Below, piece after piece: positions 1 to 52,964 of a DNA stretch of 64,000 nucleotides. The first letter of the stretch is position 1, and every line of letters begins with the position of its first letter. A program made the position numbers and the translations under genes. A model generated the notes under the pieces. It was not told the DNA's origin. It made no database searches and worked only from the letters and a program-made list of their open reading frames with translations. Source of the stretch: Tubulanus polymorphus (Eukaryota; Animalia; Nemertea); NCBI RefSeq assembly GCF_964204645.1, contig NC_134032.1:2352416-2416415 (forward strand), written 5' to 3'.

Positions 1-165
1 CAATAGTTTTCAGACGCATCTTGCAGAGAGGGCATGATTTTGGGTGAAATGTGCGAACTTTAATTGATCGAACGAATAATTTAAAAAAAAACTATTCCTG
101 AGCTTAGATAGGACAACCCGATAATATTTGCCGAATCAAAACGTTTAGGCTGTTTAAAACATTTA

Positions 166-3100
166 TTAACGTAAGCGTTTAGTTTTTGCTCGTATGGATT
201 TCATATCGATAGTCAGTATTGTGTAAAGTAGGGGATTGAGGGACGAGTTGATCGGTAGGAAAAGAACCGCCAGCCAAGCCGCCACCTGATTCGGTATTTC
301 TACCCGTAATACCGCGCAAAACTGAACGATAATTAACGGCATCCAGCAAAATAAATTACAAAGATTTATCACCAAACTTCTACGTGCTAAAATCAGTTCG
401 GTAGGGTCAATTCTACCCGATCCAGACCTGCTTCCAGAGACGAGTCTGTACATTTGCGCATAAGTCGTCATTATCGTAGCGAGTATGAAGGTGTTGAATA
501 CGGCAAAAATTGCGAAGGAATATTGCCAGGCGTTGACGTCAATTGATATTAAATTCATAGGTAAACAAACTCCAGTTTTTCCGTAGAATTTAATACCGAA
601 ATAAGATAATTCTGACAACGGCAATATGGAGATTGTACTTATAGTAACCCAACACACGCCACAAATAATGGACACGTATCTCGGTGATGTAATCGGGCTT
701 CCAGAAAATGGATTAACGATATTTGAAAATCTATGACGTGTTAGAAAGAATAGAAACGTCAACGAGCCTTCGCAAGAAATAGTGACCGTAACTCCAGCGA
801 AACTGCACAATGAACTGTCCGTCCAAGTTTCAGAATTCAGGAAATAAACTCCTTTAAAAACGTAATCCGCGCCCGCGATCGAAAACAAATAAATCGACAT
901 GAGAAAATCACAAGCTGCGATATTAATAATTAGGATGTCGGAAGATGTGTTGCGCTTTTCGGAGGATGAAAGTCGAATTGATCGAAGACGAAATAAAATG
1001 ACAATTGTGTTCGCGAAGAAACTGAACGCGGCGATGACCCAGATGATAGCTCTGAGGACTGTGTTACCCATCAGATCAGAACAAGAGGAAAACTGATCAG
1101 CTTTAGGAAGGCACCGGTCGACATTCGGAGCCATGCAGCAAAATTTGTAAGCGTCAGACGATAGAGATACTAGCGATGTCAGATTGATGAAAACTTCTCT
1201 TTCTGTGGAAATGAATTGAGAATTGTTGGTTAAATCGAGAATTCTAAGTTTATTTAATCCTGAAAAAGCATATCGTGAAATATGATGGATTCTGTTGCTG
1301 CTGATATTCAACGACTGTAATGTAGATAATCCTCTAAACACATTTCTACCAAGCAGCAATAGCGAAAGCCCTTGAAGGTTCAGAATTTGTAATGACATTA
1401 AATCTCGAAAGGTATTGTCGTCTAAATGGCGTAGTGGATTTGCAGTTATCAATAACTCTTTTAAATTATACAAACCGATGAATGTGTTTGTGGATAATGA
1501 CGTTATGTTGTTGTATGTAAGATCTAATGTATGTAAATTATGCAGGTTTGTGAACGAGTTCGGTAAAATATGAGACAATTCGTTGGAAGAGATGTTGAGC
1601 ATTCGAAGATAAACGAATGAAGAAAACGTCGATTCATTGAATCGAAATTCGTTTTTTGACAGAATTAAAACTCGAGTTGATTCCGAGAAAAGACCAGTAA
1701 TATTTGTTAAACCGGCATTCGCGCAATCAATCAAATGACCTTGGCATCTACAGCCCATCTGACACGTGACGTTACAGAAAGCCTCGTCATCAATTGTGAA
1801 TTTACAATTTACGACACCATCACAAACTTCAGATTGTGGAATACATCGATTTTCGTGGCCACATTTAAACATTCCTGGACACGAAAATGTCTCACAGTTT
1901 TGTTCATCTTCTGAATTAGGACAATCTGATTGACCATCACACACCTGTCTGATCGGTATACAGTACGATGCTGGACATTTTACAGTATCAGCTGGGCATT
2001 CAAATTCTTCACATCTCAATACGTGCTCAAAATTTCTACAAACTGGGAAACCATTCGTCATTCTTTCTAGAATACATCTGTGACGTCTTGAATAGCAGTG
2101 AGGAGAATTGAAAGAACATCTTTGTTCATCTGATTCCGTACAGAGATTTGTGAAGTTAGTCGTGCAGTAGTTTTCATTATTGCACTGAACAGTAGGATTC
2201 ACTGTAATACTAGTTGTTGTTACTAATTCATCTTCTTCGAGGCTTCCACTACAATCCACGACACCATCCTGGTACAACTGAGAACTGATACAGTCTCCAC
2301 TGTTACACTGGAACCCCTGACACAATTCAGTAGTGCATCCCATTTCATCTGATCCGTCTTTACAATCAGTGACTCCATCACATCTGTTAGCCATACTGAT
2401 ACATTGACCACTTTTACAGCTAAATCGTTCAGACAAACACGGGGGATGAAAACAAGATTCCTCATCCGAACCATCCACACAATCTTGTACGAAATCACAA
2501 AAACCACTTATTGATATCACCTGACCATCATCGCATTGAAACTGACTGTGTAGATTTATATCCGTACAATCGATTTCATCTTCACCGTGTTGACAGTCGT
2601 GTCTGGTATCACATACGCGATGGTTGCTGATACATCTTTGATCGTTACATTTAAACTGCCGCGATTTACAACCGCTTATAGAAGCTGACTCGTCATCAGT
2701 TACATTGAACGAACACAAAACAGAATGCGCTGTATCTGTCGCATTATCAAAATATTTCATCATCCATTTAACTGATTGAATATAAGTTATTTCATCTCTA
2801 GTGATTATTGGGTTTATAACTTGCAGTCTGTCATTAGACGTTATCGTTAGTACAGAGCCATATTGATGTTGATATTGAAATGCTGTTATCAAATTTAAGA
2901 TATCTTTTTCAGTATTACTGTTAATACTACCTACTTCGGCCCGGACGCCATTACACATCTCTGTCGCAGTTTTTATATCAAGACCTCGATGTTTGTTCCA
3001 TTGCGTCAGTATTTGATAGCATTGTCTGCCTATGCTTACCAAACCAATCGTACAGCTCGATTCATTGAAATCAATATCTTGAAATGTATTTTCCAGTATT

Positions 3101-6100
3101 AGAAATGTGTCGTTTTTGGTTATATTTAACATTGTTGCTGTTCTATTTTCGTTATCAATCCTTTCCGATTCGCAAATAAAACTCGTATGAACCTCTTCAA
3201 TTTTGCAGGGGAATCGAACCCAGTTCGCTGATCCTCGTGGATTATTCAGTATCATCGCCGTGCACGGCATATTGACGTCATTTATCGGTTGTTTTCTGAG
3301 AGGAGATATCAATCCTTGAACAACTTCTGGTATCGTGTCGTTATTTGTAGGTTTATACCACTCTGTGTAGCTCAATGGTTTCCCATCAGTCCACGTGTAG
3401 TAACCAAAAGTAGGCTAAAAGTTTAAGTTGCAAATTCATGATTAAAACATCAAAATGGTATATAAAATTCTTTTAACGAGATGGATTTTAGAAATTAAGA
3501 ATTTTACCTGCATTTTTAATCCAATCATCATTATGAGCGCTTTCTGTGAATAGGCATTTAGAAGAAGTTCTGTTGCGAATAATCTTTTGATGGAAATCAT
3601 TTCCTGTTCTGAGTTGATACTGAGTAGATGTCCCGCATACTTCTGTCTACAGTATATTTCAGCGTTCTCCCAATTCAGACGTTCATCTCTTATGTATTTT
3701 ACGCATGAAATTCCCGAATCTAGAAATCCCGATTTACAGACATTTTCAAACTGTTTAACCGGTAACGACTGTTCTAATGTGTATTGTATTTGAAATGTAG
3801 GGATGAAATGTTTCACCTCAAACCACAGGTTGTCATCTCTTAAACTATAAAACACAAGTCCCGTTATCGCGTTATTGTCACATATTTTATGCTCATGTGT
3901 GATTCTTCTAGTATCCGATTCATATATCGATTGTTTGTAGATTATCGGATCATTGTCTCTTGCACCCGATTTCGTGCACAGTACCCTGCCTATGTATTTG
4001 ATTAGAAACCGGTGGTAGGAAAATTTGCCCCGCCTGACCACTACAGGATAGTTATAATATAGCGGTTGATGTTGATACTCAGATGATCCCGGATAATTTG
4101 GTGACTGCAACAACCCGCATTCATCTTCGAATACGCTCCCATGCACATACGCTTCTATAACGGCAGATTTCAATTTTTGACATTTACTCCGAAGTTCAAC
4201 CATTAAATAATAATTCCAGAATAAACTCGCGGTTCGCATTTTCACAGTGTTTAATACCAGGCTGTTATTGAGCGACTGACTAATCAAGCTAACGTACGTA
4301 CCACATGACCCGAATGGTATAGCACCCTGAAAACATCGGTCGATTTGATATTCGTGTTCTGATAATATGTAAATGTTTCTCAAAGGTAGGCGTCGGTTTT
4401 CGGGTGTTATCACGAGACAGTGTGACGTCATATCGACCTGCTGTTCTCCCTCCCGGAGGATGTACCCGTCACAGTCGGTAGGACGAAATCTGAGATATGA
4501 TTCTTTTTCAACGGTCAACTGGTCATTCCACTTATACGCGTATGCTGCTACAGTTACCGACCAACCGGATGTAATCAGACTGACGACGTTACGGTCGTAC
4601 GGGTCGTATAAACGAGGACAATACGGACCGTATCGTCTAGCCGTGAAATTACCACCGTCGAATATGTAAAATCCAGCTCGCTCGCAGTTCTCTGATAAAA
4701 CTGTTAGTCCCATATTCTCTTCATAAATGTCAACTTTCCATTTAAACTCGTATCTAGTGATGCGATAATTTACCGATACTTTTTTTTGTTTCGGAAACAG
4801 TGAGTTTGGCGTCAAAAACGGCAACTGGTTCACCTAAAGTTCGTCAATAATAAGTATATCAGACAGATTTTTGATAATATATGTTATTTCGGTACGGGGT
4901 AACATAATTACAGAGGTTATACTCACCCGACGGTTGTTGACCTTGATATCGTCTATCGAAATAGATTCCATTTTATAGCTTATTTCAAATCTTACATCAT
5001 CGTGAACTGTTGTTTTTAAAACGCACAGTATGACGAGAAAGCCGTCAGATTTGACACTCAGTGATTGCAGGTAGTTGTGACCGAGTAAAACATCAGTTCC
5101 TACAACGCGTAACCCTTCTAGTTTATATACACCAATGACGTCACCGGATGTGACGAGATCACGTGTCCAGTTAAAGACGACGTACTGTAACACCTGTCCT
5201 GTGATAGACCAGCAGTGTAAGTGTTTTGATCGAGTTGTTACGTGTAAACTGTTGTCATCGGGAATGAGCACTCCCGACTCGTTGTTAGAGATCTGAATCA
5301 ACCGATTAGCGACGTTCCAATCTGATATTTTATACAATTGGACTAAAAGCAGTGATTGCACAGTTGTCTTCCGTAAAACGAATACAGCTTTGTTTGTTTT
5401 AGAATAAAATGATGAAGGTGGATGTCCAGATTGTTGTGGTATTAAAGCGAAAGGATCACTGCTGGTGTTCCATCCGTCGTGGAGTTTAATGGACACCGAT
5501 GATGATTCCCCAAATCGGTAGAATGTGAAATCGATATCAATTAACGTAAGATTCATCGCATAACCTCGCGGCATCCCGCTCCACTCAACAAACAACTTGC
5601 AATTACGTAATTTATGAATCGCGAATTTATAACCCCGCTCAGCTTTTAGCCGCTCCAATTTTAAATCGAATCTTGAACCGTCGTGGAAAATATTTATTTG
5701 ACTTCGCCCATAACGATAAATGACATAAACGCGACTACCTCGCGCTCCAGCGACTTTACTCCTAAACATCAACGAGATCGAATCGTCACGGCGGATTTCA
5801 TGTTTTCCATCACCGCACAATCTGTTATCGGACTCACTGACGAGAAGGTAGTTATCACCACAGAATATTGACAGCTCGATATCATGGTAAACTTGGACGT
5901 GAAAAGTCCCCGGTAAAGAGCTGTTGATGAACCACCGACATTCAACACCGCGCGATAACGAAGGGTAATTCGGCGAAACGATGTAACCGGACGTAGAATC
6001 TAACGGGTACCACGTATTGTTACAAGACGAACTTACCGTCACAGACGATTCCTCGATAGAGTCTGCTGTGCGATCAGCGCGCGCGATGCGAACTTGACAG

Positions 6101-6156
6101 ACGATCAGCGACGCTATAAACAGCGCTCTCAGTCGCCGCTCCATACCGAACAACAT
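166..6156 (-). CDS. GRL101-like LDLa-LRR GPCR with extended N-terminus (signal peptide, CUB, C-type lectin, ~6-7 LDLa, LRRs, 7TM); exons 6156-4927, 4833-3508, 3414-166; ~1930 aa
   Basis: Three same-frame ORFs join through two 93-nt phase-0 GT-AG introns (4926-4834, CGG|GTGAGT...TTTAG; 3507-3415, CAG|GTAAAA...TTTTAG). Motifs: signal peptide MERRLRALFIASLIVC; CUB SGYIVSPNYP..CRW; CTL WENAEIYC..GHLLSINS..IGL..WTDG; LDLa CD...DC.DGSDE; LxxLxLxxN repeats; hinge FCC..C.P..DQFSSCSDLM; TM7 NPLLY. Confidence 0.9.
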
Positions 6157-6411
6157 CGACACGATACGAATTATGCTCGGCTGTCCACAGATTTTGAAGT
6201 TCTGTTTATAACTGAACTTTAGATCACCTGTTTAGAACTTTACATGACTGCAGAAATAAAATGTTTGAACCACTCAGCAATTTAAGGATACGAATAAACT
6301 TTTCAGTCCATTATATTTTGCCAAAGGCGATTTTGGTATCATTTACTCGTGTAGTCATTATTTCACGTTTTCCCTGACTCGATGGTATCTATTTCTCAGT
6401 AATTACCATCA

Positions 6412-6568
<157 letters not shown>

Positions 6569-6879
6569 CAACAATTATCAATTATGTGCAACAATTATAG
6601 CTCGTGGATTTGCGCATCGTAGATATCCATGTCCAATTATATTTTGAACCTTTCGTCGTTGTAGATACTCGAGGGTATCTATTTCCCAGTAATTACCATC
6701 AGTGAATATATGTGCAACAATTTCAGCTCGTGGTTTTACGCATCGTAGATATCGATGTCCAATTATTTATTTTGAACCTTTCGTCGTTGTACTGCGTGTA
6801 TATCGAGCACACCAATCTGACTATATTCACGCCTGACAACTACGAAACTAGCAAACTTACTTAAATCTTATCGACGTCT

Positions 6880-7215
6880 TGGAAAAGTGGTTATAGCGTT
6901 CGACTGTGGTAGGCCAGGTCGTGGGGTCGAACCCCGTACATAACCGTAGTATCCGCGGGCGCTTAACACTTATCCGCATCGCCTCTCTCCACCCAGGGGT
7001 ATGTGGGTACCTGGCCTGACATGACGTTTGAGCGTCTAGTAACTGCTTGGATGTTATGTTTTTTCCCCAGAGTATTTATGTCTTTAATGTCTTTTTTTAC
7101 TCATAAATGGTTAGAGTTAAAGGCTGGGGGTAATAATACTGATTTAATAGCGAGCGCCATTGAACATTGCATCGCAGTGAAAAGGGCGCAATCGAAATTA
7201 AATTTTCATAAATTA
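6880..7215 (+). mobile_element. tRNA-derived SINE
   Basis: A-box-like AGTGGTTATAGCG and B-box-like GGGTCGAACCCC, followed by CCTCTCTCCACCCAGGGGTATGTGGGTACC, which resembles the conserved central segment of marine-invertebrate SINEs. 3' boundary approximate. Confidence 0.6.
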
Positions 7216-8291
7216 CTATGAAGTACTATTACTAAATCGGTATTTTCGCGAGGTATACATTGAGGTAGATACTCTTCGCGAGTTAAATTGAGGAGGGCCC
7301 AGTCCGTACGAAAAAAAACTCGCAGATACAAATACAAACTGTTATATTTTTGACCACGACTGCCAATGCGTTTGGGACGCATTGGCAGTCGAGTTTGATT
7401 AACAATCAATGTATAATCAAACTCGAATACGATTGGTTGCTTTTAGTGCTAGATACAAAACTTACTGTATGGAAGCCCTGAAACGACATTACGAATTACG
7501 TTTTACGTTTTACGAATTATGTTTTACGAATTACGTTTTGGGCAACGATTTACCACTACATTTCGGTTCAATTTATGACAAGAGGTCAAGGTTGTAGTGC
7601 ACTCTCCGTGAATAACAATTAAAAATTGCCACTTGGGTAGCTTACAGGCAGGAGGCAGCGCTGTAGTGTGATCGGTTGTAATTTTTTGCCGAATGCTTCC
7701 TTAACTGATAACGATGATGGATGACTTTGCAGTCCAAACGCTGTGCTTTCAAATTTAGATATAATTATTAAAAGCTAAGACTTGTTCTGGTCATTTGTTA
7801 CAATCGCACAATTGTATCCACACCGATATGGAGTCCAATTAAGCTTTTTTATATCTCCATGAACCCCGAATAATTTCCAGTTTTGCATCATCGTGTGCCC
7901 TTCCTTGCCAAACAGGACAGTGTCAGTGCTTGTAATTTATTAATTAATGAATCCGGGACTTTGTATGCAGGCTGAATCTCTATACTTTAAATCATTTGAA
8001 ATTATCATCAAGTCACTTTTTGACTTCCTAATTCCTCATTATTACTCTGATACTAAAAGAATGCATTCGAAACTCCGTCAATTTTACTATTGATATAGTG
8101 TTATTTCGAAATGCAAAATAAATTCAGTCAGATTTATTCTATCATTCGTCATGATTCGACTTCATTGCAAAGCCTGTGTTTTTCTGAAAACTCATGGAGC
8201 AATAGCCAAAAGCATGGAAGCCCTGAAACGACATTACGAATTACGTTTTACCAAATACGTTTTACGTTTTACGAATTACAAATTACTAGTT

Positions 8292-8866
8292 ACTTGTGTT
8301 CCGTGGTACCCAGTGACAATTAAACAACTTGTGTTCCGTGGTACTCAGTGACAATTAAACAACTTGTGTTTCGTGGTACTCAGTGACAATTAAACAACTT
8401 GTGTTCCGTGGTACCCAGTGACAATTAAACAACTTGTGTTCCGTGGTACCCAGTGATAATTAAACAACTTGTGTTCTGTGGTACCCAGTGACAATTAAAC
8501 AACTTGTGTTCCGTGGTACCCAGCGACAATTAAACAACTTGTGTTCCGTGGTACCCAGTGACAATTAAACAACTTGTGTTCCGTGGTACCCAGTGACAAT
8601 TAAACAACTTGTGTTCCGTGGTACCCAGTGACAATTAAACAACTTGTGTTCTGTGGTACCCAGTGACAATTAAACAACTTGTGTTCTGTGGTACCCAGTG
8701 ATAATTAAACAACTTGTGTTCTTTGGTACCCAGTGACAAGTGTTCTGTGGTACCCAGTGACAATTAAACAACTTGTGTTCTGTGGTACCCAGTGACAATT
8801 AAACAACTTGTGTTCTGTGGTACCCAGTGACAATTAAACAACTTGTGTTCTGTGGTACCCAGTGAT
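8292..8866 (+). repeat. 35-bp minisatellite (ACTTGTGTTCYGTGGTACCCAGTGACAATTAAACA), ~16 copies
   Basis: Head-to-tail near-identical units with no unique spacers. Confidence 0.95.
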
Positions 8867-9685
8867 AAACTATTTATCCATGTATTTTTCTATTTTATTT
8901 GGTTTTAGAATTTATTGTAAATAGGATTTGTCTCACGGCTCTACAGCTCTTCTACGAAGTTAGAAACTTGACCTTTTAAACGTTTCGGCGTGAAAGTCTT
9001 GTTGATAGGCTAAGGCGCGCACGTGACCTAACGCGCACCTGCTGGTAACGCTTTAAAGCTGAAGAAACCGGGCTTTGGCATTCGTATTTGAGCGTACATA
9101 GTACATGAATGGATAGGCATATATTAATTCGTAACCAGTATAGATCGCTTCCTGAAGACCCGAGGTACCTCGCGGTATATTGTTTGAGACTTTAGTTCGT
9201 GGTGGAGAAACCGTGACAACCTGCTCCGAAATCGTAAGTAATTTTTTGATAATTTAGGCATCTCCAAATGCCAAGCTATTCATAGTTTAATGCCAAAGCG
9301 AACATTAAAACATAATACTTCATAGTGGATTCCGATTTAGCGAGGTAGATCATAAAAAGATGAAGAAATTGACATACAATAACCCCTATTGACGAATTAG
9401 GGCTTCAGAGATTTTTTGACGCTCGTAAATTTGTACCTCGTAAGAATTCGACCGATTTTATAGAGCGGCCACTTTCCGGCCCCTAAAATGATTTCCCCTC
9501 CCATGTATTTCCTCTTGGAGTAGAATAATGGTGCTCTCCTATTTTTTTACAGAAATTTGATATATAAGAAGCCCAGAAATACCCGATGAAAAGGCCTAGA
9601 AATTTTATTTAGTGAAATGAAGTACATTTATTTGACCAGATATTTATTCTTTCATTTTTAGCATGATTAGTACTGACCGTTAGGA

Positions 9686-12600
9686 ATGTCTGCTGCTGAG
9701 CAAGCCACTGGTAAATATATCAAATTTTTTAAACTTGAGATTAAGATTAAGGCAATATGAAAACATTAAGATGCACTATATTTCTCTTTTTACAGCATCA
9801 AAAAAGCGCTCAGTAAATCTCACTACCAAGCAAGGTGCCCATTCGAGAAAGAAGTACTTCGGAAGTTCCAGAAAAAAGCGTAGGAGTGAGTCTTATATCT
9901 ATATTTTTTGGAATGTTTTTATTAAAGAATTAAAATTCATTACACATGTTAGAAATTTTGGTTATTCGTTAGTTGATTGTGAGGTTTACAAGTTTTTTTA
10001 TATTTCGAACTCTGATTGAGTGACTGTCAATCAAATGACTTAAATGAAAGGATAACGACAATGAGGATAATGCAAGTATAAGTATGAGGATAATGCAGGT
10101 ATGATAAATATGTTGTTCTCTATTAAACCCCTGAGGCCAGTTTCAGTTTCTCTGTTTAAGGTGGTACAGGTTTATTCGGTACAGGTTTATTTTTTACTAA
10201 CATCTGCAAAAAATATGAGACAAATATTTCTGATTCTGCTCAATTCAACACATATTTCATTCAAATAATGAAGGTCTTTGAAAGGACCCATTTTCTACAA
10301 TCATATTTATTCTTCCCTCTTAACATTTCCCTAGGAACAAAAACTAGGGACATAGTTGCAAATTCAACATTTGAAGAAAGCCAGAGTAGTGAATTTACGG
10401 AAAGAGAGGAAAGCTCGACTAATGACGATATTTTGCTGGAAAATCCACTCGAGATATCTGCTGTTGATGGTGTAGATGGTGTAGATTTGTCTGATATTGA
10501 TGTCCTCCTCCAGTGTAGTGATCTAAATTCGGTTTCCTTATGTTCAATATCACCTGTTAAGTCTCATTGTCAATGTTCTTGTCATCCTGATTTGATTACC
10601 ATGAAAGAGAAAATCGATGAATTATCCGACCAAATTCGACAGAAGAATGAAGAAATTCAAAATTTGAAAGCGAAACTTGAGCAAATTTATTCACAAGATT
10701 TATTAAAAATTGACACAGATTCATCAAACTTAGAAACATTTGAAGCTACTCCCCTTGTTACTAGTTTTCGCAGTAAAAGCAGTTGTTACACCAAATTAGA
10801 ACATCCAACAATTAATTCCAGTTCAGCCTCAAAGAAAACTCTTGACTCGAGAGCAAGAAAATTGAAACTTGTTTTGGATAAATTATCCTCTATTTCATCG
10901 TCAGGCAATGATATGGCTGTAACATTATCTTGTTTCATGAAAAGGTATCCTGATTTAGTCAAAAAGGCTCTGGAGTTGGCCGGTATCGCAACTGTAAATC
11001 AATTAGATCCAACTCAAGTAATAGAATTGAAATTAAATTTGAGACTACCGATGAATAAGTTACTTGAACTTAAAAAAATCTTGAAACATTACAATATTCA
11101 GATTTTTCCGTCTAGTCGAAATATTAGACAAGAGCTTGCAGCCAGACAAGAGTCGTTTTCTACATTCATTGAAGCTGGTGAAATAGAACTGGAAATTAAT
11201 AGCAGAACGCATGAAAAGCAATTGTCAGCGTTTGTTTCTGTGACATCAATAGAGCTATTAATACAAAAGTCAGTAGAAAAACTGATAATGAAAAATCAGT
11301 TAAATAGGTCCCCAGAATTTCATGACGAAATATGGGCAAAGATCGGGGTGGATAAAGGGGGCGGTAGTACAAAGATGGTACTAGCCATCATAAACGGACC
11401 ATCCCCGAATAGTCCAGATCAAACGCATTTGATCAGTTTTTATGAAGGGGTTGACTGTTTGGAGAATTTGAATAAGGTTTTTGGAAAATTCCAGGGTGAA
11501 ATTTCAACTGTCAAAACCATCATCGTTTTTGATCAAGAAATTACCGTTAGACTATTTCTAATGGGGGACCTTCATTTCCTTTGCCAGATGATGGGCCATC
11601 AAGGCAGCGCATCATCTTATCCATGCCTATGGTGTGAGGTAACACTCCATGATTTGCGCAAAAAAGATGCAACACCTCATACCCCAACATTCAAGCAGTA
11701 CCAATCGCGTTCAATCGGGTCCTATTTAAGGAATGCACAAACTGCTGAAGCTACACCACGGGTTATTGGTGCGGAGACACAAAATATTCAAAGTAGTATG
11801 CTTTTCAAGCCCTCTGATTTAGGCCATCTAGTTCCTCCTGGTCTCCATGTTTCTCTTGGCTTAGGGTTAATGTTCTTCGAGATGCTAGAAAAACGTTGTT
11901 GTGAACTTGATGAATCTTCCCTCGGAGAACGTTTTCCCGAGCAATGGGAAGCATGGAGAGCAGCTTCAGCATCTGTAACTAGCTTGCAGGATGAACTGGA
12001 TAGCCTAAAACAGAAGTTACAATCTTGTCAAGAGCTAGTCGACTTATTGAAAAATGCAAAGAAAAAACGCTCTAGTCCATTAAACTGTGGGGCGCCGATT
12101 TGTATAATTCGTTCTATTGAGAATCCGCAGCCACATATATATTTGTATTGCACGAACTGCGAAGCACCATACCACAGCCAATGTGTTCAATCTGTATATG
12201 ATCCTGATATTTCTGATAGCGATTTCCTTTGTTTGAAATGTCGGCCACTTGCGGACAAAAAAATAACACCGGATAAATTCCTGAAACAAGCAGAAGAAAA
12301 CATGAGCAAAATCAAAGATATAGAAATTCCATCAATAAAAGTACTGTTAAATCCGAGAAGAACCAAGCTTAACCAAATATATAAGGACATAACCTTAGAG
12401 ATGGGACCAATACAAAAAGATCTAAATGAAAATCTTAAAAAGATAGGAGTCGACAGACAGGCATATCACTCGAATAGCTTTGTAGGAAACCATGTACACA
12501 AGTTGTTTAAAAAGGATGAGGAAAATGGAATTAACAATCCACAAATACTATTATCCTGTCTCAACAATTATCCGAATGACCGAAAGTTATTTTTGGATCT

Positions 12601-13054
12601 TTTCGAGAAGTTTCAAGATATCTATCAAGTATATTCAGCTTGTCGGTTTTTGTCCGAACCTGAAATAGAACATGTAGTGAACAGTATTCATGAATTTGGT
12701 ACATGGTTTCCTCAAAATTTCCCCACGGCGAATATAACTCCCAAATTGCATGTTTTGATCTATCACGTGCCTGAATTCATCCAAACATGGAAGTCATTGG
12801 GGCTCTTTGGAGAGCAGGGGCTTGAAAGCAAGCATGCGAGTATGAACCAAGATGCCAGAATCTATTCCTGTTTGCGGAACAGAGTAGTCCGCACAAAATT
12901 AATGTTTTTGAATCAAGGTCTCTACTCAACAAAATCACTGCACTTACACAAAATAATCCGGAAGTGTAACTGTGGAGGATTCTTCAAGAAAATGTCACCA
13001 TCGAGTAATACACGAACTTGCCAGAAATGTAGCAATGTCAGTGATCAGGTTTAA
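9686..13054 (+). CDS. RAG1/Transib/Chapaev-like DDE transposase with internal PHD finger; exons 9686-9710, 9796-9885, 10335-13054 (944 aa)
   Basis: Phase-1 GT-AG introns join in frame. Motifs GVDKGGG (D), MGDL (D), YPCLWC, PPGLH.SLG, FVGNHVHKL, PKLHVLIYHVPE and GEQGLESKH (E) parallel RAG1 D600/D708/ZnC2/ZnH2/E962. C4HC3 PHD at 12086-12241; basic NLS-like N-terminus; C-terminal CxC..CxxC. Confidence 0.88.
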
Positions 13055-13466
13055 CCTATAATGAGAAATATTTCTTCATGAGCTGAATATGCATTGATAT
13101 AAGTTTATTCATCATACTTGTTATAATGTTTAAAAACTTAAAATGCCGAAAATTTTGAGGAACTGTACCTTCGAAGCTAGCTTCCCAATCAGTTCCAGAT
13201 TCTCTAATTAGTTTTTGTTCTATGATGTAAATCACTGTTGCACGTCATAAATTTATGTAATTTCTGAAAAATAAAAGAAAAAACAAGCTGAAACTTATAA
13301 CCAGTTTTAGTTCATACTTAATTACTGATTCTCATTGACAGCCCTGCCTGATTCGGTCTTAAGTGATGACGAGAGATAAAACAAAATAGGGAGGGCAAGG
13401 GAGAGAGATGTAGCCTACAGCCAGCAAGCCTCTGATAGGCCTACCGCCCGCCCGCATCAGTATTAA

Positions 13467-13693
13467 GCTAGGGACACACGAGCGCTAGCGAATTCGCCGG
13501 CGAATTCATACACCCGATCGCCGGTGTAAATAATCGGCCGAAAATATTAAACATGTTTGATACGGGCGATTCGCCGGGCGATCGAGTCGGCCGACGAAAT
13601 CGTCGTCGCCGTGAGTGGCCACACGAGCGAATTTTTCGGGCGATTTATAAATTCGCCGCGATCGGGCGAAAATACGCTTGTGTGCCGCTACAT
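13467..13693. mobile_element. Palindromic MITE nested in element 1
   Basis: Imperfect terminal inverted repeats (GGACACACGAGCG / CGCTTGTGTGCC), GC-rich internal inverted repeats, TTAA on both flanks (13463-13466, 13694-13697). Confidence 0.6.
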
Positions 13694-15887
13694 TTAAGGA
13701 TTTTGACAGTATAGAAAGTATGGCGGTTTATAGAGGATAATTAACTATACATTTGAATAGACGTGTACTACAAATGAATGGAGTTTGTGGACGTGATGTA
13801 TAGGTAGGCTAGTAGCCTAGGCTATCGGCAGCAAATCGAACGAAGGTGCATACATTCTGGCCTCATATTTTGTTTATTCATATAGCAATAAAGTACTTAC
13901 CGTGGGTGAACTCATGCTTTATCCTTTATACGTGATTTGATCAGCGGCAGTTTTCAATAAAACTAATTGAATTTGGATTGAATCGCTTTCCGGTGACAAG
14001 CTGTCGTTTCATTCTTCCATTTGAAAGCATGATGATCTTAAAACAATAGTAACCGTCGTATCCTAATAGTTGATCATTGTTATTTGGTAGGAAAACACAT
14101 TTTTGGGTGTAATTTAAAGACATATTCATCTTCTCTAGCTGTCATCACTTTTTGTTTACAATCCGCCATGATGTACGGTCACATGACTCCGCACGAAATC
14201 TAATTTTATAAAATACCGTAATATCAATTTATTTATGAAAAGAAAGTTTAAATATCGTATATTAGCAAAATACAATTGAATATTCATCACAAGACTAATA
14301 AAATATAGCTTACAAACTTATTTAATATGAATCGGAAATCATCGACAAACGCCGATGACTCCGCTGGCTGAATATGCTACAGGTGCGCGTTCGCATACTA
14401 AGTAGGGTCAAGGTTGCTTCAAGTTTCCTCGCTGTACAGCCGTGGTCTATAATAATGATAATAATGGTTACTGAAAAAAGGGATGTTCAAGGGTATAAAT
14501 CGCAGTGGTCGATCGTGTTCGAATCCGCAATTTCTGCCACTCTCAGTCTACGGCCGCGGTGCCTACAACTTATTTCGCTTTCGAGGTCATGTGTTTTATC
14601 TTACATACCATAATACGGTTGATAACGATTCTTTTTCTAAATTTCTTTTTCGAATGATTATCACGTGATCGTGATCGTGATTATTATCACGTGATATTTT
14701 AACTACGAAAATCCGACCGAGCAGACGGCGTTTAATTCACCGTACTCTGCTAATACGGTGTGTTGACCACGATCGCCGCTAGGTGGCGCTTGCGTGTGAA
14801 ATAATCTTCGTTTTTCGAGCATTTCATGAAATTAAATGATTTAGGCGAGACACAGGACAAGCACGATATTGTTGACAATCAGCTGCCTATCTATGATAAT
14901 CATATTCTGAACCGCGAGATAGATACTGATGAAGTAATAAAAGCGATCTCGCTACTTAAGAATAAAAAGGCATCTGGCATCGACGGGATAACAAATGAAT
15001 TGCTAAAAGTCAACCGATATCCCTATTTAGTTGATATTTTGCAAAACCTATTCAATCTTGTTCTAAGGACTGGCCATGTACCGGATACTTGGTCGATTGG
15101 GGTGATCAAACCGATCTACAAGAACAAAGGTGATCCCGACGATCCCGATAATTACAGAGGCATCACTCTAGTGAGCTGCCTAGGAAAACTGTTTACGAGC
15201 ATATTGAATCAGAGACTATCTCTATTTTTAGATGCAAACAATATTATAAGTGAAGCCAAGGGTGGTTTCAGATCTAAATACTCGACAGTTGATCATATCT
15301 ACACTCTTAAAACCATTGTTGAACTGTACCTTGGCCAGGGGAGAAGACTGTTCTGTGCGTTCGTAGATTTTAAAAAGGCATTTGATTCAATCTGTAGAGT
15401 AACTCTTTGGAAGAAACTAATTAGTAATTGTATTACAGGAAACTTCCTGAACGTTATTAAAAGCATGTACGACTCTGTAAAATCGTGCGTAAAATATAAT
15501 GGCAATACCTCACAATATTTCACTGCCGGCAGAGGTTTGAGACAGGGCGAAAATCTATCACCAATCCTATTTTCACTCTATTTAAATGATATAGAGGCAT
15601 TTTTCGTGGGTAATGGTAATCCAACTCTCTCATTTATAGAAAAGCTGAATTCGGACTGCGATCATGATCTTGACACCCTGTTAAATCTATTTATTATTTT
15701 GTATGCAGATGACACAGTTATCTTAGCTGAGGATGAAAATTCACTGCAGTCGCAGCTGGATACTTTGTATGCATATTGTTTAGAAAACGATTTAACGGTT
15801 AATATCGATAAAACTAAAGTTTTAATTTTTGCAAGAAGTAAATGTAGGATCAAGATAGATACAAAGTTTATGTTTGGCACAGATGAG

Positions 15888-47428: not shown

Positions 47429-50400
47429 CACGACCGTAGAGCTAATACTAACTATAAATGACCTTGACCGACGTTTAATTGAATTGAATCGGTGACAGCA
47501 AGCCGATACATAGGTTCCGAGAAATAACAATGGCCGCCTTTTCGCTAGCGACACGACCGCGGATTATTGCCGTTTCACGCGTATTTTAGATGTCTGTATC
47601 AGTTTAAACACGGACTATCGCAACATATTTATACCTCAATCGGTTCATATTTGAGCTTGAGATAATTCTTGAGAAGATGCAGTTTGTTAGTTACTTGATA
47701 TTGACGTTTACTTTTACTTCCGGGTTCATTGAATCGATGATGAATGCGATGTTTCAACGAAGAAAAAAGCTTAAAAGAGTTCTCCCTTAACTGCAGAGAG
47801 TAATTAAGTCTATTTAGGAAATGTGTGCTGCCAAATAAGCGTGTAAGTATTTATAGGATCTTTTGTAAGGCAAATTACAGGCTGATTAGGTCTCCTGGTC
47901 CAGTGTACCTGGTAGGCCTTTTTGTCCTTCCTTTTTATTTGATGAAGACTAAGCTAATAGTAGGCCTAAAGACCCACTGATTGCCGTATATATGGCAGTG
48001 AGGTTAAGTATGGGAGGCTTAGTTTCTTTCATCTTTTGATTTCAGTGATTGGAAATCAAAAAGTTTCTCACAACGTACTCAAAACTTAGCCTTGGCTACC
48101 GAAAATGAAATGAACCCTAAACTAATATGGCGATTGAACCCAGGAATATTTTAGAATAAAGTAAGTAGTTTTGAACCACTTCCATGTTTGTTTCTGGTGG
48201 CTAGGTGATTTGTTCGATTTGGGTCTACTATAAATTTGGGAAACTGGGTCGACTCGGGTCCATGGGAAACATTTAATGTTGATTCGAGGCTGTAGTCTGT
48301 GCGGTTTGGTTAAGTTTCCAAGTCAACTCACGCAGCTAACCCATTCTGGCAGAACCAACATGATACTTAAGATTGTGCACATGAAAATGATTGTCAGTAT
48401 TTTTGTTCCAAATATATTAATTTATTTGTTATTCCATTTATTGCACAACATTAATCAATAAGCTATCATTAGCTAACCAGACAAAATCTCATAATCTACT
48501 TGTATTAGAATTCCAAATTTTCAATTTAATATTTTACAGTAATTGATATTTTTTATGCAGAGAAGACAATTGTATATATATCGTGAATCTTGAAACCGAC
48601 AACTGTTCGTGTGAAGTAAAAAGGTGAGTAAATAAAATCTCATAATTTTTTCCTCTCAATTATATTAAGAGCAAACAAGAAATACTCTGCCTTATTTCAC
48701 CGACCTGTGTGATTTTAACGAATAAAAGTGAAATATAAGATATATACATGCGTGCGGTATACATTTACAATAATTTTCCGTTTTCTTTTCAGGTAACGGT
48801 ACATACATTCAAACAAGCCTTTTACACTTTTTACACTGTCGAGTGTTATCTTGACTGATGTAAAAGCCACCACACTCGCATTTTCGTTTCGTTGCTTCGG
48901 ATTTTGGTGGTTTTGTCGCGTAAAGACCTTGATTGATGAATAGATATTTAGTTCGCAGAACTTGATCACGGACTGTACAGTAGATTCTGTTGTCTCTGTT
49001 CACGCTTGCGTGTTTACCTTCAAGTGCTTGCTCACCGAAGAGCCCCAGAGAACCCCACATATCAACAAAATCAGGAGCGTGGTAAATAAGTATATGGAGT
49101 TTTGGCGTGATAGTGGAACTAGGAAATGCGTCGGTGTAAAATCGTCCGAAATCATGACACAGTTTACGGAATAAGGACTTTTCATCTGCTGTGAGAAATC
49201 TACATGCCGTGTATAGTGCATATAAGTTACTAAGTCTCTCGAATAGCTCGAGAAATTTCGTGTAATCATCATCAGCATGACCTGAGAGAACACTACATAG
49301 TTTCTGTGGATTGTTGGATTTGTCATCATTTTTGAGCATTTTATTTATATGGTTTCCAACAATGCAACCACTATAGTACGCTTGCCGATCAATACCTATT
49401 TCGGCAAGAATTTCATTTAGCCGTTTTGTAACCGGCCCCATTGATGAATTAACAACTTTGAATATTTCCTGTAATTGGTTTTGAGCTTCAGACAATCTCG
49501 ATTTTAGATCAGCTAACTCAGATTTCTTTTCCGATATTTCTTGAATTTCCAGCTTGATAATACTATCCGCTGACATAGTTTTCCCCGTACAACATTCCAT
49601 ACATTTGAAATTAGCTGTAGGTCCAAATATACATTGCTTGTGATAGGGGGAATCGCAATCAATGCACTCAACAAAATCATTTTGTTTGGCATTCGGAATG
49701 TTTCTAATCAAACAAATCTTTGCTGAACAACTAATAACACAACGACCCTTTTTTTGGATTGTTTAAGAAGGTCAACAGTTTGATTAAGAGTGACAATCAT
49801 TTCCTTGTACTGATTTAATTCCTCCTGCACTGCGCATACATCTAGGGATTTTTCTTTCCAGTTTCTGTACAAATCGATATCCCGATCTTTTAATCCTTCA
49901 TTGTCGACTTCCTGACATTTCTGCTCCAACATCTCAAAGAATAACAGACCTAACCCCAAAGATATGTGCAGTGGAGGAGGAACTAAATGGTCCAAATCGT
50001 CAATCCTCACTAGCATTTCATTGCAAATGCTTTTTGTGTTTTGCCCTGGTTGCTGCTTTTCAGCATTAACATTATAATCGGCTACAGTTCTACACTGCAC
50101 TACTATATGATCAGGTGTGTGTGGTTTACCATCACGTTTTCTCAGCTGTTCCAATCTAATTTCACACCAAAGGCATGGATAAGAAGCCGATGAACCCTGG
50201 TGGCCCATACATGTACACAGAAAAGCTAAATCGCCGATCAGAAAAAATCTTATAGCCAAAGTTCCTCTACTACATTCGACATATCTAATTTGTGGCAGTT
50301 GATCAAAGATTTTGCCAAATATGATCTTCATATTGCTGTAAGTATCGACAGCTTCGAAATATGAAATCAACTCGGTGTGATCGGTACTGTTTACTAGTGT

Positions 50401-52964
50401 ACTATTTAGTACAGACAGTACTAGCTTCGAAGAGCCACCACCTTTATCGGCTCCGATCTTTACCCAAATTTCATCATGAAAATGCTCATCCGTCACAAAT
50501 TTTCCGGTGACTATCAAATTGTTAACAACGTATTCAAGATGTGATTTTAAATTCACTATGTATACATAGGGGACAAGTTTTTCTTCTAGAGTTCGAGCAT
50601 TGATCACTAAATTCTTTTCGCCAGTGAATATATTCTGATCGATGTGATCACTGCGTTTTTTTAGTTCTACTCGAATCTTATCTGATGAGGGAAACACCTT
50701 TACATTTTGACTTTTCAAGTTACGGTCTTATTCTAGCATTTTGGTCATTGTAAGACGCAAATTCAGTTTCAAGTCAACTGACTGTTCAGGAGTGAGCTTA
50801 GTTCCTTTCATTTCTGGAAATTCATTGATTACAAGATTTTTTAGATTTTCATCTTTTTTCAACATATGTGCAACTAATTTAGCAGCCTCAGTGATACTTT
50901 GGTCTTTGGATGAAATAAATTGTAGTATTGATTTTGCTTTGGAAGCTCTCTTCTCAACAGTCTGTCGACTTGACTCTGAAATGGATGTGTTTGGTTTTTC
51001 AAGTTTGCAAAAATGATGTTCATTTGTTCGAGAACCTGATGGAATAATAGCTTTGAATATATGATCTAGAGAACCTTCCGATACAGTAAAAACATTATTA
51101 TCCGTCATTAATTTTTCCAAGCGACTATTAATGATTTTTAAATTGCCATTTTCCTTTTCGACATTTTTCAGCTGTTCTTTTAATAAATTCAGTTGTTCCA
51201 GATAATCTTCAGATATGTCTGTCTGTGTCGTTTGTTCATGTACTGGTGTTGTGGCATCTTCACTCGCAAGAAGGTTTTCTGTGTCGTGTAGTTTATTGCC
51301 TTGTCCTAATGAAATTCAGAATATTTTCATTGCCTGTATTCATTTGTAGAGATTCATTTTTATTGTAATGAAATGACGGTCTGACAAGCATCGATGAAAT
51401 TAAGTTAACGAGTAAAATTAAGTTTTTAAACTATGCCTAATTACTATGATTCATCGAATTCATACTGTTTCATTTGACTCTGAAGAAATTTGTGATCCCA
51501 ATTTGTTTAAAGTTATTAGGCACAAATCCAAATGCAACTTCCAAAAATTTACTGCAAATGAACAACAATTTTCAGCTGAAGTCGAAGAACGTTTGACTTA
51601 TGTACCACAAGTTAATAACAATTGATCTTGGAGTAACGATTTGACCATTAAATGATTGCTCCAAGTATAGATGAAATGTCAATTGCAAAGAAATGGAGTA
51701 TACGATACCTTCTGGATACGGGAATTGAACGAAAATGAGACAGAACATAGAATCCTCTAACAATAATTACAAGAACAAATTAGTAACTTTTGAATAAATT
51801 TAATCGTACTAAAAATCACAATATTTGTATCAATAACTTACTAGATAAAACCATTTGAACAATTTTTTTTAAATTTTTTCTCGAACTGCTTCCCTGGAAA
51901 TATTTTTTTCTTTTGCTGGAACCAGACTTTGAGGAAATACTTTTATCACTATCCATCGTCTTACAAAAAAACGCTGCCGAAAAACCTGTTTTTTAAAAGT
52001 AAACAAACAATTATTAGACTTTTTTACTATCAAATGTATGACTAATTCACGAGACTTGAAATACTGACCAGATTCCGACCCGAGATTTGAAATAGTTGGT
52101 CCAACTAACTCGTGGTTCGAGACTCCATCCGAATCTACATAAAATCCTGCCGCCAAACCTATTTTAGGATGTAAACGAAACAATTATATAACTGGCCTAA
52201 CTAACTTGATAATTTCTCAACTTCCAACACCAATCATTTTGTTTTTTTTTTCACTATTTATTGTAGTAGGCCTAGGCATGTCGTACCCTAATAGGGCTAG
52301 GCCTGTCAGGCTAGACCTGACTTCAGCCCCTGGGCTTCATTCAGGTCTTAACTTTAACGATATTAAGAGACCAGACTTATTTTTTGGATGTGCAAGAGTG
52401 ACTAGTTCTTGTTCGAAGGAGGGGCAAGGCCTGGGCAGCTAGCGCTACGTAGGTTGTAGGCGCTGAAAAACGCCAAACTTAAAAAAGTCCTTAAAACGCA
52501 AAAACAAATGACATTCGCTAGCCACTCATGAGGTATCTAACCATATGTATCATATATCATCGGAAAGCTTATGGCACCATCTACATCGGTATGTTGAGAT
52601 AATTTCGTTTTCCCAAACCCCTAAGAAATAATTAGCGAATATGTACCTCGAAAGTCGTTAGTTTTGGCCTAACCGGTTTTCAGCAGCCAACCAGGCGCAG
52701 ACGACTGACAAATTTCAACTTGTGACTACATATAGATCTTCAAAACCTGGTTGAGAATACATTAGAACGAAGTGGGCTCGAATCCCGTTATCCGTTTTCT
52801 CTACGGAACTGCGCGCGTACAGCTGGTCGTATTCGGTTAGTTTTCTATGAGAATGAACAAAGCAGGTGCGCGCACTTATTGTGCTGCCATCAATCGGTTT
52901 TCAAAAGAGGCTCAGAAAATCAATATTAATTGTTGACAAATTCTGTATCTACTCTACGGTCGTG
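47429..52964 (-). mobile_element. Second, divergent RAG1/Transib/Chapaev-related DNA transposon, 5536 bp (element 2)
   Basis: Perfect 13-bp TIR CACGACCGTAGAG at 47429 and (reverse complement) ending 52964. Shares subterminal motifs with element 1. Flanks AACA/TCCA do not form a TSD. Confidence 0.85.
48809..51956 (-). pseudogene. PHD-containing RAG1-like transposase; exons 51956-51842 and 51305-48809; frameshifts near 50725 and 49750
   Basis: GADKGGG, IGDL, GHQGSSASYPCLWC, PPPLHISLGLG, PHD CIDCDSPYHKQC..CMEC, VGNHINKM, TPKLHILIYH, GEQALEGKH. The first exon has RKKYFQGSS, matching RKKYFGSS in element 1. Confidence 0.88.

What the first reader, a model, noticed from the sequence alone, without database searches (positions are those of the whole stretch)
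8930..14448. Intact, possibly active RAG1/Transib/Chapaev-like transposon whose transposase carries a built-in PHD finger
Seen: 14-bp CAC-initiated TIRs, a 4-bp GTCT TSD and an uninterrupted spliced 944-aa ORF. Its motifs are collinear with the RAG1 core: GVDKGG ~ D600, MGDL ~ D708, YPCLWC ~ YICTLC, VGNHVHKL ~ NGNFARKL, LHVLIYHVPE ~ FHKTLAHVPE, EQGLES ~ EGNES/E962. A C4HC3 PHD sits inside the Zn-binding insertion. Established: in the V(D)J recombinase the chromatin-reading PHD is supplied in trans by RAG2, and RAG/Transib make 5-bp TSDs whereas Chapaev makes 4-bp. Inference: this is a single-polypeptide transposase + reader lineage within the CMC/Transib radiation, and it may be unclassified.
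Basis: partly seen in the sequence, partly recalled or inferred. Interest (0 to 1): 0.92.

Follow-up and report, generated by a model that had tools for sequence, protein, structure and literature searches.

The report
Young Chapaev transposon with PHD-bearing RAG1-like transposase
This is a real, very recently mobile cut-and-paste DNA transposon of the known Chapaev group, whose RAG1-shaped transposase carries a PHD zinc finger on a coiled-coil stalk, a design that many uncharacterised animal proteins share and nobody seems to have studied.

Summary
Window 8934-14444 is a 5,511-bp element with 13/14 CAC...GTG terminal inverted repeats and a GTCT duplication.

- **Mobility.** The genome holds five copies differing by six substitutions and one 24-bp deletion. 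Each has its own perfect 4-bp duplication and an open transposase frame. Public contigs contain the exact empty site.
- **Family.** The transposase is Pfam DUF1280, the Chapaev family (87 bits). A family profile hits RAG1 and RAG1L at E 1e-15 to 2e-18. An AlphaFold model (pLDDT 93) superposes on mouse RAG1 459-1008 (Z 28) and on HzTransib (Z 26). D340, D412 and E831 are the catalytic-triad candidates. D412 and E831 align by profile to D708 and E962. D340 is placed by fold topology.
- **PHD.** A C4HC3 PHD sits at the tip of two roughly 43-residue helices. It is weak in this protein (17.7 bits) but clear for the family.
- **Lineage.** The insert marks a deep lineage in cnidarians, a nemertean, echinoderms, hemichordates and nematodes. 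This lineage lacks the N-terminal Chapa (RAG1 NZD-like) domain of classical Chapaevs.
- **Limits.** RAG1-Chapaev kinship is published, and databases already auto-name such proteins "PHD-type". Histone reading is untested, and the methyl-lysine cage is degenerate here.
- **Earlier notes.** The scan flagged the same kind twice elsewhere in this genome (s1-496671, s1-496701).

The parts
8930..8933 (.). left copy of the 4-bp target-site duplication (GTCT)
   Evidence: The empty-site contig keeps a single GTCT.
8934..8947 (+). left terminal inverted repeat, CACGGCTCTACAGC
9030..9041 (.). subterminal 12-mer AACGCGCACCTG, repeated in inverted orientation at 14380-14391; candidate transposase-binding site (inference)
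   Evidence: (I24). It lies 96 bp inside the left end and 53 bp inside the right end.
9234..9661 (+). intron in the 5' untranslated region (GT..AG)
   Evidence: joint 9233->9662 in run X4; weak (depth 6.6, 29 letters on the short side)
9686..9710 (+). coding exon 1 (ATG plus 8 codons and 1 base)
   Evidence: The junction to 9796 appears as a loose end in X4, from a slightly diverged copy.
9796..9885 (+). coding exon 2, basic and NLS-like (KKR...RKK...RKKRR)
   Evidence: Splice sites are kept in all five copies.
10335..13054 (+). coding exon 3: almost the whole transposase, including the stop codon
   Evidence: The junction 9885->10335 is predicted only; no contig covers it.
11351..11353 (+). 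codon of D340 (GVDKGG), first catalytic Asp on strand beta-1 of the RNase H fold
   Evidence: invariant in A1; DSSP strand 144-153 of the model. Equivalence to RAG1 D600 rests on fold topology.
11567..11569 (+). codon of D412 (MGDL), second catalytic Asp, aligned to RAG1 D708
   Evidence: at least 90% conserved; profile alignment
11618..11635 (+). YPCLWC, aligned to RAG1 YICTLC (zinc ligands C727 and C730)
11936..12064 (+). ascending helix of the coiled-coil stalk (residues 535-577)
   Evidence: model helix 346-388, pLDDT 87-93; matches SMC-type coiled coils at Z 9-10
12086..12241 (+). PHD-type C4HC3 zinc finger (C585 to C636)
   Evidence: Pfam PHD 17.7 bits, below the cutoff; family profile against solved PHD fingers E about 1e-6; two short strands plus a helix in the model
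12269..12400 (+). descending helix of the stalk (residues 646-689)
   Evidence: model helix 457-500
12482..12505 (+). VGNHVHKL, aligned to RAG1 NGNFARKL
12746..12775 (+). LHVLIYHVPE, aligned to RAG1 FHKTLAHVPE (zinc ligands H937 and H942)
   Evidence: H806 is at least 90% conserved.
12824..12826 (+). codon of E831 (EQGLES), catalytic Glu aligned to RAG1 E962
   Evidence: at least 90% conserved
12965..13030 (+). C-terminal CxC...CxxC zinc-ribbon-like tail
   Evidence: The model superposes on BbRAG1L out to residue 709, further than on RAG1.
13471..13696 (.). nested short high-copy repeat (MITE-like), part of all five copies
   Evidence: dozens of genomic copies of 13514-13696 at 87-97%; depth spike and loose ends
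10730..14444 (-). spliced antisense non-coding transcript, with minus-strand GT..AG introns at about 12280-12946, 13054-13166, 13264-13900 and 14200-14313
   Evidence: four CT..AC joints in X4, one also in X5; no ORF above 62 aa
14380..14391 (.). inverted copy of the subterminal 12-mer
14431..14444 (-). right terminal inverted repeat (GCTGTACAGCCGTG on the + strand)
14445..14448 (.). right copy of the target-site duplication (GTCT)

Best explanation
Window 8934-14444 is an autonomous cut-and-paste DNA transposon of the Chapaev group (CMC / Transib-related). It transposed very recently in this invertebrate genome and probably still can. Its single gene has three coding exons and about 944 codons. 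It encodes a DDE transposase with the whole RAG1 core fold, from the dimerisation/DNA-binding domain to the C-terminal domain.

Shown: the identity of the ends, the 4-bp duplication, the insertion polymorphism, the fold, the conserved triad candidates D340/D412/E831, the C2H2 zinc site, and the presence and position of the PHD finger.

Inferred by analogy with RAG and Transib: the enzyme pairs the two CAC ends, nicks at the CAC and forms hairpins on the flanking DNA. It then inserts the blunt element ends with a 4-bp stagger, where RAG and Transib use 5 bp.

Also inferred: the acidic PHD finger, held on a stalk of two roughly 43-residue helices, docks the transposase on a basic chromatin ligand, most likely a histone H3 tail. 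That would bias or license where or when cleavage and integration occur. This is the job RAG2's PHD does in trans for RAG1. I put this last step at about 40%.
For: - Mobility: five copies differ by 6 SNPs and one 24-bp deletion. All five have distinct perfect 4-bp TSDs and open frames with intact splice sites.
- Empty site: a joint 8929->14445 skips 5,515 bases with 4 shared letters, in X1 and X4. In X1 it sits on a haplotype with its own SNP (8899 T>C), and its contig depth is 29.6 against 54.1 for the shared flank.
- Family: DUF1280 at 1.9e-24 and 87 bits. DUF1280 is the Chapaev transposase family (PMC3985635). There are 1,794 representative homologues.
- RAG1 kinship: the family profile hits RAG1 at 2e-18 and BbRAG1L at 1.4e-15, collinear through D708, the CxxC, the HxxxxH and E962.
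- Fold: model pLDDT 93.3, pTM 0.86. All 49 Foldseek hits at E<=1e-3 are RAG1, RAG1L or HzTransib; the next hit is Hermes at E 0.1. VIA-align gives Z 28.1 over 462 residues at 3.7 A on mouse RAG1 459-1007, and Z 26.0 each on BbRAG1L and HzTransib.
- PHD: C4HC3 pattern. The family profile hits solved PHD fingers (KDM5B, BPTF, PHF1/2/8, MLL) at about 1e-6. Relative P0029 passes Pfam's PHD cutoff at 30.8 bits.
- PHD charge: the Cys-to-Cys core has net charge -4 here and a median of -2 in 31 relatives.
- Expression: a sense 5'-UTR splice and an exon 1-exon 2 junction in X4.
Against: - No transposition or binding experiment exists.
- The PHD scores below Pfam's cutoff in this protein (17.7 against 24).
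- Its first ligand pair is CxxxxC rather than CxxC. Only one of the four BPTF aromatic-cage positions is aromatic (Y603); the Trp position is Pro612. H3K4me3 reading in particular is therefore unlikely for this element.
- The exon 2-exon 3 junction has no read support. One X4 contig keeps the intron between coding exons 1 and 2.
- The best-supported transcript over the gene is antisense, which could mean the family is being silenced.
- Run kinds are not on record. Depths of contigs are only suggestive of heterozygosity.
Confidence: 0.85

Rival explanations
1. The PHD-type finger is not a histone reader. Like the piggyBac cysteine-rich domain, it binds DNA (for example the subterminal repeats), or it holds two transposase subunits or a host partner together during synapsis.
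For: A PHD-like cross-brace finger in the piggyBac transposase binds transposon DNA, while related ciliate domains bind H3 weakly (PMC8086355). The aromatic cage is degenerate here. A finger on a long stalk could reach DNA or the partner subunit. A 12-mer is repeated in inverted orientation inside both ends.
Against: The finger core is acidic (net -4; family median -2), which argues against DNA binding. Ten of 31 relatives keep Trp at the cage position before the His, and several also have Trp at the second cage position. The best profile matches are histone-binding PHDs.
Confidence: 0.35
2. The family moved recently but is now silenced or defective. The five copies are relics of a short burst, and the transposase is no longer made in useful amounts.
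For: The best-supported transcript is a spliced antisense RNA across the 3' half of the gene (X4, also X5). Sense-strand evidence is thin. The family is small, with no non-autonomous derivatives carrying these TIRs.
Against: All five copies keep the full frame and splice sites, with 0-1 amino-acid changes each. The insertion in this window is still polymorphic. Several sister subfamilies in the genome also have multiple intact copies.
Confidence: 0.2
3. It is a true Transib or RAG-like (ProtoRAG-type) element rather than a Chapaev.
For: The fold matches RAG1, RAG1L and HzTransib equally well (Z 26-28). The termini start with CAC.
Against: The TSD is 4 bp in 5 of 5 copies and at the empty site, not 5 bp. 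Pfam assigns DUF1280, and no RAG1 family reached E<=1. Sequence identity to RAG1 is 11-16%. There is no RAG2-like second gene: apart from the transposase frame, no ORF listed over 8800-14600 exceeds 94 aa. Only CAC of the heptamer is shared.
Confidence: 0.03
4. It is a domesticated host gene family or a segmental duplication, not a transposon.
For: The frames are intact and conserved.
Against: The copies end at identical TIRs in unrelated flanks, each with its own TSD. An exact empty allele exists.
Confidence: 0.01

Closest known systems
Chapaev transposons (CMC superfamily; Pfam DUF1280/PF06918; Kapitonov and Jurka 2007; PMC4079192, PMC4411706)
   Same: DUF1280 transposase above the Pfam cutoff, invariable 5'-CAC...GTG-3' termini, 4-bp TSD, DDE triad, distant but significant RAG1 similarity, animal hosts.
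   Different: This lineage has no N-terminal Chapa (RAG1 NZD-like) domain or RING: 0 of 23 N-termini, against 12 of 25 in the PHD-less clade. It has a roughly 190-residue insert (two-helix stalk plus PHD) where classical Chapaevs have about 80-140 residues. It is not Chapaev3, which makes TWA 3-bp TSDs.
RAG1 / RAG1L (ProtoRAG) and Transib transposases
   Same: The same fold from DDBD to CTD (Z 26-28). Equivalent second Asp and Glu of the triad, the C2H2 zinc site and a conserved His aligned to the His of RAG1's LHCDIG motif. CAC termini. The C-terminal zinc-ribbon-like tail overlaps the tail of BbRAG1L in the superposition.
   Different: Sequence identity is 11-16%. The TSD is 4 bp, not 5 bp. 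There is no heptamer/nonamer RSS-like TIR beyond CAC. There is no RAG2-like partner; the PHD is in the same polypeptide. RAG2's own PHD is not among the 60 best profile hits.
Rehavkus (Mutator-related) transposases and the piggyBac / Tpb2p cysteine-rich domain
   Same: DNA transposases that carry a PHD or PHD-like cross-brace finger (PMC6446971, PMC8086355). Tpb2p's domain binds methylated H3 tails.
   Different: They are unrelated catalytic folds and superfamilies. Their fingers are terminal rather than inserted on a stalk inside the catalytic domain.
Chromoviruses (Ty3/gypsy integrases with a C-terminal chromodomain); from my own knowledge
   Same: An integrating enzyme fused in cis to a histone-mark reader that steers integration.
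   Different: They are retrotransposon integrases with a chromodomain rather than a PHD, placed at the C-terminus.

Membership tests
Chapaev (CMC) DNA transposons | Transposase matches Pfam DUF1280 (PF06918) above the gathering score | tested here: met
   87 bits against a cutoff of 25, E 1.9e-24, residues 207-385. PMC3985635 equates DUF1280 with Chapaev.
Chapaev (CMC) DNA transposons | Termini 5'-CAC ... GTG-3' | tested here: met
   CACGGCT.. and ..AGCCGTG at the exact alignment limits of five copies
Chapaev (CMC) DNA transposons | 3-4 bp target-site duplication | tested here: met
   4 bp in 5 of 5 young copies and 3 of 4 letters in an older copy. The empty site has a single GTCT.
Chapaev (CMC) DNA transposons | N-terminal Chapa domain (complex zinc finger, RAG1 NZD-like; Pfam RAG1_imp_bd) | tested here: not met
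   No hit in this protein. 0 of 23 N-termini of the PHD lineage have it, against 12 of 25 in the PHD-less clade.
RAG1 / Transib-fold transposases | RAG1 core fold (DDBD, pre-RNH, RNH, ZnC2, ZnH2, CTD) | tested here: met
   Z 28.1, 462 residues, 3.7 A on mouse RAG1 459-1007. All 49 significant Foldseek hits are RAG1, RAG1L or Transib.
RAG1 / Transib-fold transposases | D-D-E triad and C2H2 zinc site at the RAG1 positions | tested here: met
   D412, E831, C431/C434 and H806/H811 align to D708, E962, C727/C730 and H937/H942 (RAG1 numbering from my own count). D340 is on beta-1; its match to D600 rests on topology, not on a printed alignment.
RAG1 / Transib-fold transposases | 5-bp TSD | tested here: not met
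   4 bp
RAG1 / Transib-fold transposases | Heptamer-spacer-nonamer type TIRs; RAG2-like partner gene (RAGL only) | tested here: not met
   Only CAC is shared. Apart from the transposase frame, no ORF listed over 8800-14600 exceeds 94 aa.
PHD finger | C4HC3 ligand pattern with cross-brace spacing | tested here: met
   C585-x4-C590 ... C606-x2-C609-x4-H614-x2-C617 ... C633-x2-C636. The first pair is x4 rather than the usual x1-2.
PHD finger | Significant match to PHD models | tested here: inconclusive
   This protein scores 17.7 bits, below the cutoff of 24. Relative P0029 scores 30.8 bits. The family profile matches solved PHDs at E about 1e-6.
PHD finger | Aromatic cage for methyl-lysine (BPTF Y10, Y17, Y23, W32) | tested here: not met
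   Aligned residues are I589, E596, Y603 and P612. Ten of 31 relatives keep the Trp.
PHD finger | Binding of a histone tail | not testable with these tools
   Needs peptide or nucleosome binding assays.

The most novel reading that the evidence does not exclude
The stalk-mounted PHD is a built-in functional counterpart of RAG2's PHD. Binding a histone H3 tail would position or allosterically license a RAG1-fold transposase on chromatin. RAG1-fold enzymes would then have been coupled to chromatin reading at least twice, once in cis (this lineage) and once in trans (RAG2). The PHD and the Chapa/NZD domain would be alternative solutions in sister lineages. A young, apparently active element would make this directly testable.
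Probability: 0.25. Interest if true: 0.8.

Novelty: new variant of a known kind. Interest (0 to 1): 0.58.

Why it matters
RAG1's catalytic core comes from this wider transposase radiation, and V(D)J recombination depends on a PHD reader supplied by RAG2. Here the same fold carries its own PHD on a coiled-coil arm. The lineage is old and widespread, and it has given up the RAG1-like N-terminal zinc domain. Neither the 2015 paper on Chapaev domain architecture nor the 2026 preprint mentions this PHD. The five copies are nearly identical, intact and still polymorphic. That offers a native, probably active element for testing how a RAG1-fold enzyme uses a chromatin-type module and what sets a 4-bp rather than a 5-bp stagger. 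If the finger turns out to bind DNA or nothing, this is just a well-preserved new Chapaev family.

Tried and rejected
- The repeat finder did not report the TIR, because the central mismatch breaks its 9-nt seed. The ends were established from copies instead.
- A genome-wide search for the TIR found no non-autonomous derivatives, only family copies.
- Yuan and Wessler 2011 (the CMC definition paper) is not held. I could not check whether it mentions a PHD.
- Repbase and Dfam are not available, so I could not test whether the family is already catalogued.
- The first alignment (A2) was too large for folding and for Pfam. I cut homologues to their cores (A3).
- I tried to fetch longer flanks of the sister subfamilies to test their TIRs and TSDs.
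- No run is on record as RNA. Strand and splicing were read only from GT..AG or CT..AC joints in contigs.
- The subterminal 12-mer is kept in one older copy, and mutated or deleted in another. This says nothing about whether it has a function.
- Rejected readings: domesticated gene, segmental duplication and Transib proper (see the rival explanations).
- Only exon 3 was used, by reference. Exons 1 and 2 (25 and 90 nt) are too short to search.
- The antisense exons were joined only inside a local script, to scan for ORFs.

Full report
**The observation**

- GTCT lies at 8930-8933. A 14-nt terminus CACGGCTCTACAGC lies at 8934-8947. Its inverted partner at 14431-14444 has one mismatch, and GTCT follows again at 14445-14448.
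- A 928-codon ORF runs from 10268 to 13054.
- Canonical splice sites link 9686-9710, 9796-9885 and 10335-13054 in matching phase. That gives 944 codons.
- Below, residues are numbered on the translation of window:10334-13054 from 1. Add 38 for the full model.

**It is a transposon, and a very young one**
- A search of the window's own 268-Mb assembly found five full-length copies. They align from exactly 8934 to exactly 14444 at about 100% identity. Older fragments are 81-95% identical.
- The five copies lie in unrelated flanks. Each is bounded by its own perfect 4-bp duplication: GTCT, TGTG, AAAA, TTGG and ACTT.
- They differ by six substitutions and one 24-bp deletion in 5.5 kb.
- All five keep the splice sites and the open frame. 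Three have a single amino-acid change.
- The 14-nt terminus occurs 13 times in the genome. Every occurrence is at the end of a family copy. The reversed control gives 2.
- An older full-length copy on contig 5 has flanks TCGC and TCCC, matching at 3 of 4 positions.
- Public contigs laid on window:8860-14750 contain the empty site. A joint from 8929 to 14445 skips 5,515 bases, with four letters fitting both sides. That is the two flanks joined through a single GTCT. It appears in runs X1 and X4.
- In X1 the empty-site contig carries its own variant (8899 T>C). Its depth is 29.6, against 54.1 for the shared flank. This suggests a heterozygous insertion rather than an excision scar. Contig depths are only suggestive.

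**Transcripts**

No run is labelled RNA, so strand and splicing come only from splice-type joints.
- X4 shows a GT..AG joint 9233->9662, a 5'-UTR intron. The support is weak.
- X4 also has a loose end that joins exon 1 to 9796. It comes from a slightly diverged copy.
- One X4 contig retains the intron between coding exons 1 and 2.
- Nothing covers the 9885->10335 junction. The 944-codon model is therefore predicted, with partial support.
- The better-supported RNA is antisense. Four CT..AC joints (about 12279->12947, 13053->13167, 13263->13901 and 14199->14314) define a spliced minus-strand transcript. It overlaps the 3' half of the gene. One of these joints is also seen in X5, a run from a different study.
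- The antisense RNA has no ORF above 62 aa.

**What the protein is**
- Pfam gives DUF1280 at 87 bits, against a cutoff of 25. Majorek et al. equate DUF1280 with Chapaev transposases and place it in one clade with RAG1 (PMC3985635).
- The published hallmarks of Chapaev are CAC...GTG termini, 3-4 bp TSDs and a DDE motif (PMC4079192). All are met here.
- The family is large: 1,794 representative proteins at E<=1e-3.
- The query alone only hints at amphioxus RAG1L (E 0.087).
- A profile of 98 cores (A3) hits zebrafish and mouse RAG1 at 2e-18 to 2e-16, and BbRAG1L at 1.4e-15. The alignment is collinear through the second Asp, YPCLWC/YICTLC, LHxxLG/LHCDIG, GNHxxK/GNFARK, HxxxxHVPE and the final Glu.
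The sixth (GVDKGG to D600) rests on fold topology.
- An AlphaFold2 model of residues 190-906 is confident: pLDDT 93.3 and pTM 0.86.
- All 49 Foldseek hits at E<=1e-3 are RAG1, RAG1L or HzTransib. The next hit is Hermes at E 0.1.
- VIA-align gives Z 28.1 on mouse RAG1 459-1007 (462 residues, 3.7 A). It gives Z 26.0 on both BbRAG1L and HzTransib. The P element transposase follows at Z 13.
- D340 sits on beta-1 and D412 at the end of beta-4. E831 aligns to E962. C431/C434 and H806/H811 align to the RAG1 zinc ligands.
- That Chapaev is kin to RAG1/Transib is already published (PMC4411706).

**The PHD insert**
- About 190 residues lie between the LHVSLG helix and the GNH helix.
- In the model they form two roughly 43-residue helices packed as an antiparallel stalk. 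The stalk resembles SMC-type coiled coils (Z 9-10). A small two-strand-plus-helix zinc finger sits at its tip.
- The finger has the C4HC3 pattern.
- Pfam's PHD model scores it at only 17.7 bits. The family profile matches solved PHD fingers (KDM5B, BPTF, PHF1/2/8, MLL) at about 1e-6. Relative P0029 passes the Pfam cutoff at 30.8 bits.
- Among 98 cores, 34 match the PHD pattern (31 with all eight ligands) and 11 more have an insert of similar length. The other 53 have short inserts.
- A tree built without the insert columns separates a 45-member short-insert clade (SH-aLRT 99) from the rest. The element groups with three proteins of the nemertean Tubulanus polymorphus (support 100).
- Named members of the long-insert side come from Tubulanus, the echinoderms Amphiura and Antedon, the hydrozoan Clytia, and the hemichordates Saccoglossus and Ptychodera. 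All are labelled 'uncharacterized'.
- The Atlas adds nematode clusters automatically named 'Zinc finger PHD-type domain-containing protein' with DUF1280.
- The two sides also differ at the N-terminus. In the short-insert clade, 12 of 25 N-termini hit RAG1_imp_bd (the Chapa/NZD domain), 6 hit zf-AD and 4 hit RING. On the PHD side, 0 of 23 hit any of these and only coiled-coil signals appear.
- This genome holds at least four further subfamilies of the PHD side, at 42-49% identity. Several have multiple intact copies. One degraded copy lies in this window. Earlier scan notes s1-496671 and s1-496701 flagged such elements elsewhere in the genome.

**How it probably works**
- The fold and the conserved active-site and zinc residues are shown.
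- Inferred by analogy with RAG and Transib: paired-end cleavage at the CAC by nicking and hairpin formation on the flanks, then integration with a 4-bp stagger.
- The role of the finger is also an inference.
- For a histone-tail ligand: the finger core is acidic (net -4; median -2 in relatives). Ten of 31 relatives keep the cage Trp. The best matches are histone-binding PHDs.
- Against an H3K4me3 reading in this element: three of the four BPTF cage positions are non-aromatic, and the Trp position is Pro.
- A DNA-binding or protein-contact role remains a live rival. The piggyBac cysteine-rich domain is the precedent (PMC8086355).

**Comparison and novelty**
- The element is a new family. No protein above 50% identity exists among 1.8 billion representatives.
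- It belongs to a known superfamily.
- PHD fingers in DNA transposases have precedent in Rehavkus (PMC6446971) and in piggyBac-type domains (PMC8086355).
- Databases already auto-label DUF1280 proteins as PHD-type.
- I found no paper that links Chapaev with a PHD. The only paper holding both terms speaks of RAG2's PHD (PMC4411706). A 2026 preprint on Chapaev domain architecture does not mention one.
- The stalk placement and the mutual exclusion with the Chapa domain appear unreported in the papers I could search.
- I could not consult Repbase, Dfam or Yuan and Wessler 2011.

**Limits**
- The spliced model was not joined for any search or fold. Only exon 3 was used, by reference.
- The ends of the sister subfamilies could not be fetched.

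Noticed in passing
window 10730-14444, minus strand: A spliced antisense transcript with four minus-strand GT..AG introns overlaps the 3' half of the transposase gene. It is seen in contigs of two studies (X4, X5), is better supported than the sense mRNA, and has no ORF above 62 aa. It could be a silencing precursor or a regulator of the element.
   Followed up: partly
window 13471-13696: A short high-copy repeat (MITE-like, ends GGGACAC...GTGTCCC in typical copies) is nested in the 3' non-coding part of all five copies. Dozens of copies at 87-97% are scattered over the genome.
   Followed up: partly
window about 48818-50802, minus strand: A second, degraded transposase of the same PHD-bearing lineage lies in the same window. 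It is 44% identical, in two pieces, with one stop. It belongs to a different subfamily.
   Followed up: partly
G000 contig 12, about 9.0-11.3 Mb: Many of the genome's related transposase copies, intact and broken and from several subfamilies at 42-57% identity, cluster in this 2-Mb stretch. It could be a transposon-rich or piRNA-cluster-like region.
   Followed up: no
window 9030-9041 and 14380-14391: An exact 12-mer (AACGCGCACCTG) is repeated in inverted orientation at unequal distances from the two ends (96 and 53 bp). A shorter shared CTTGACC lies nearer the termini. The unequal spacing recalls asymmetric end architecture in RAG/Transib systems, but this is untested.
   Followed up: partly
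window 8700-8868: A tandem array of a 35-bp unit (about 5 copies) lies immediately upstream of the insertion site.
   Followed up: no
L037-L041 (G000 C4:16.14 Mb, C8:5.02 Mb, C12:9.77 Mb, C3:15.53 Mb, C6:18.12 Mb): A sister subfamily (844-codon frame, 48% identical) has five copies that are more than 99% alike. They differ in the number of an internal 161-bp tandem repeat next to the gene.
   Followed up: partly
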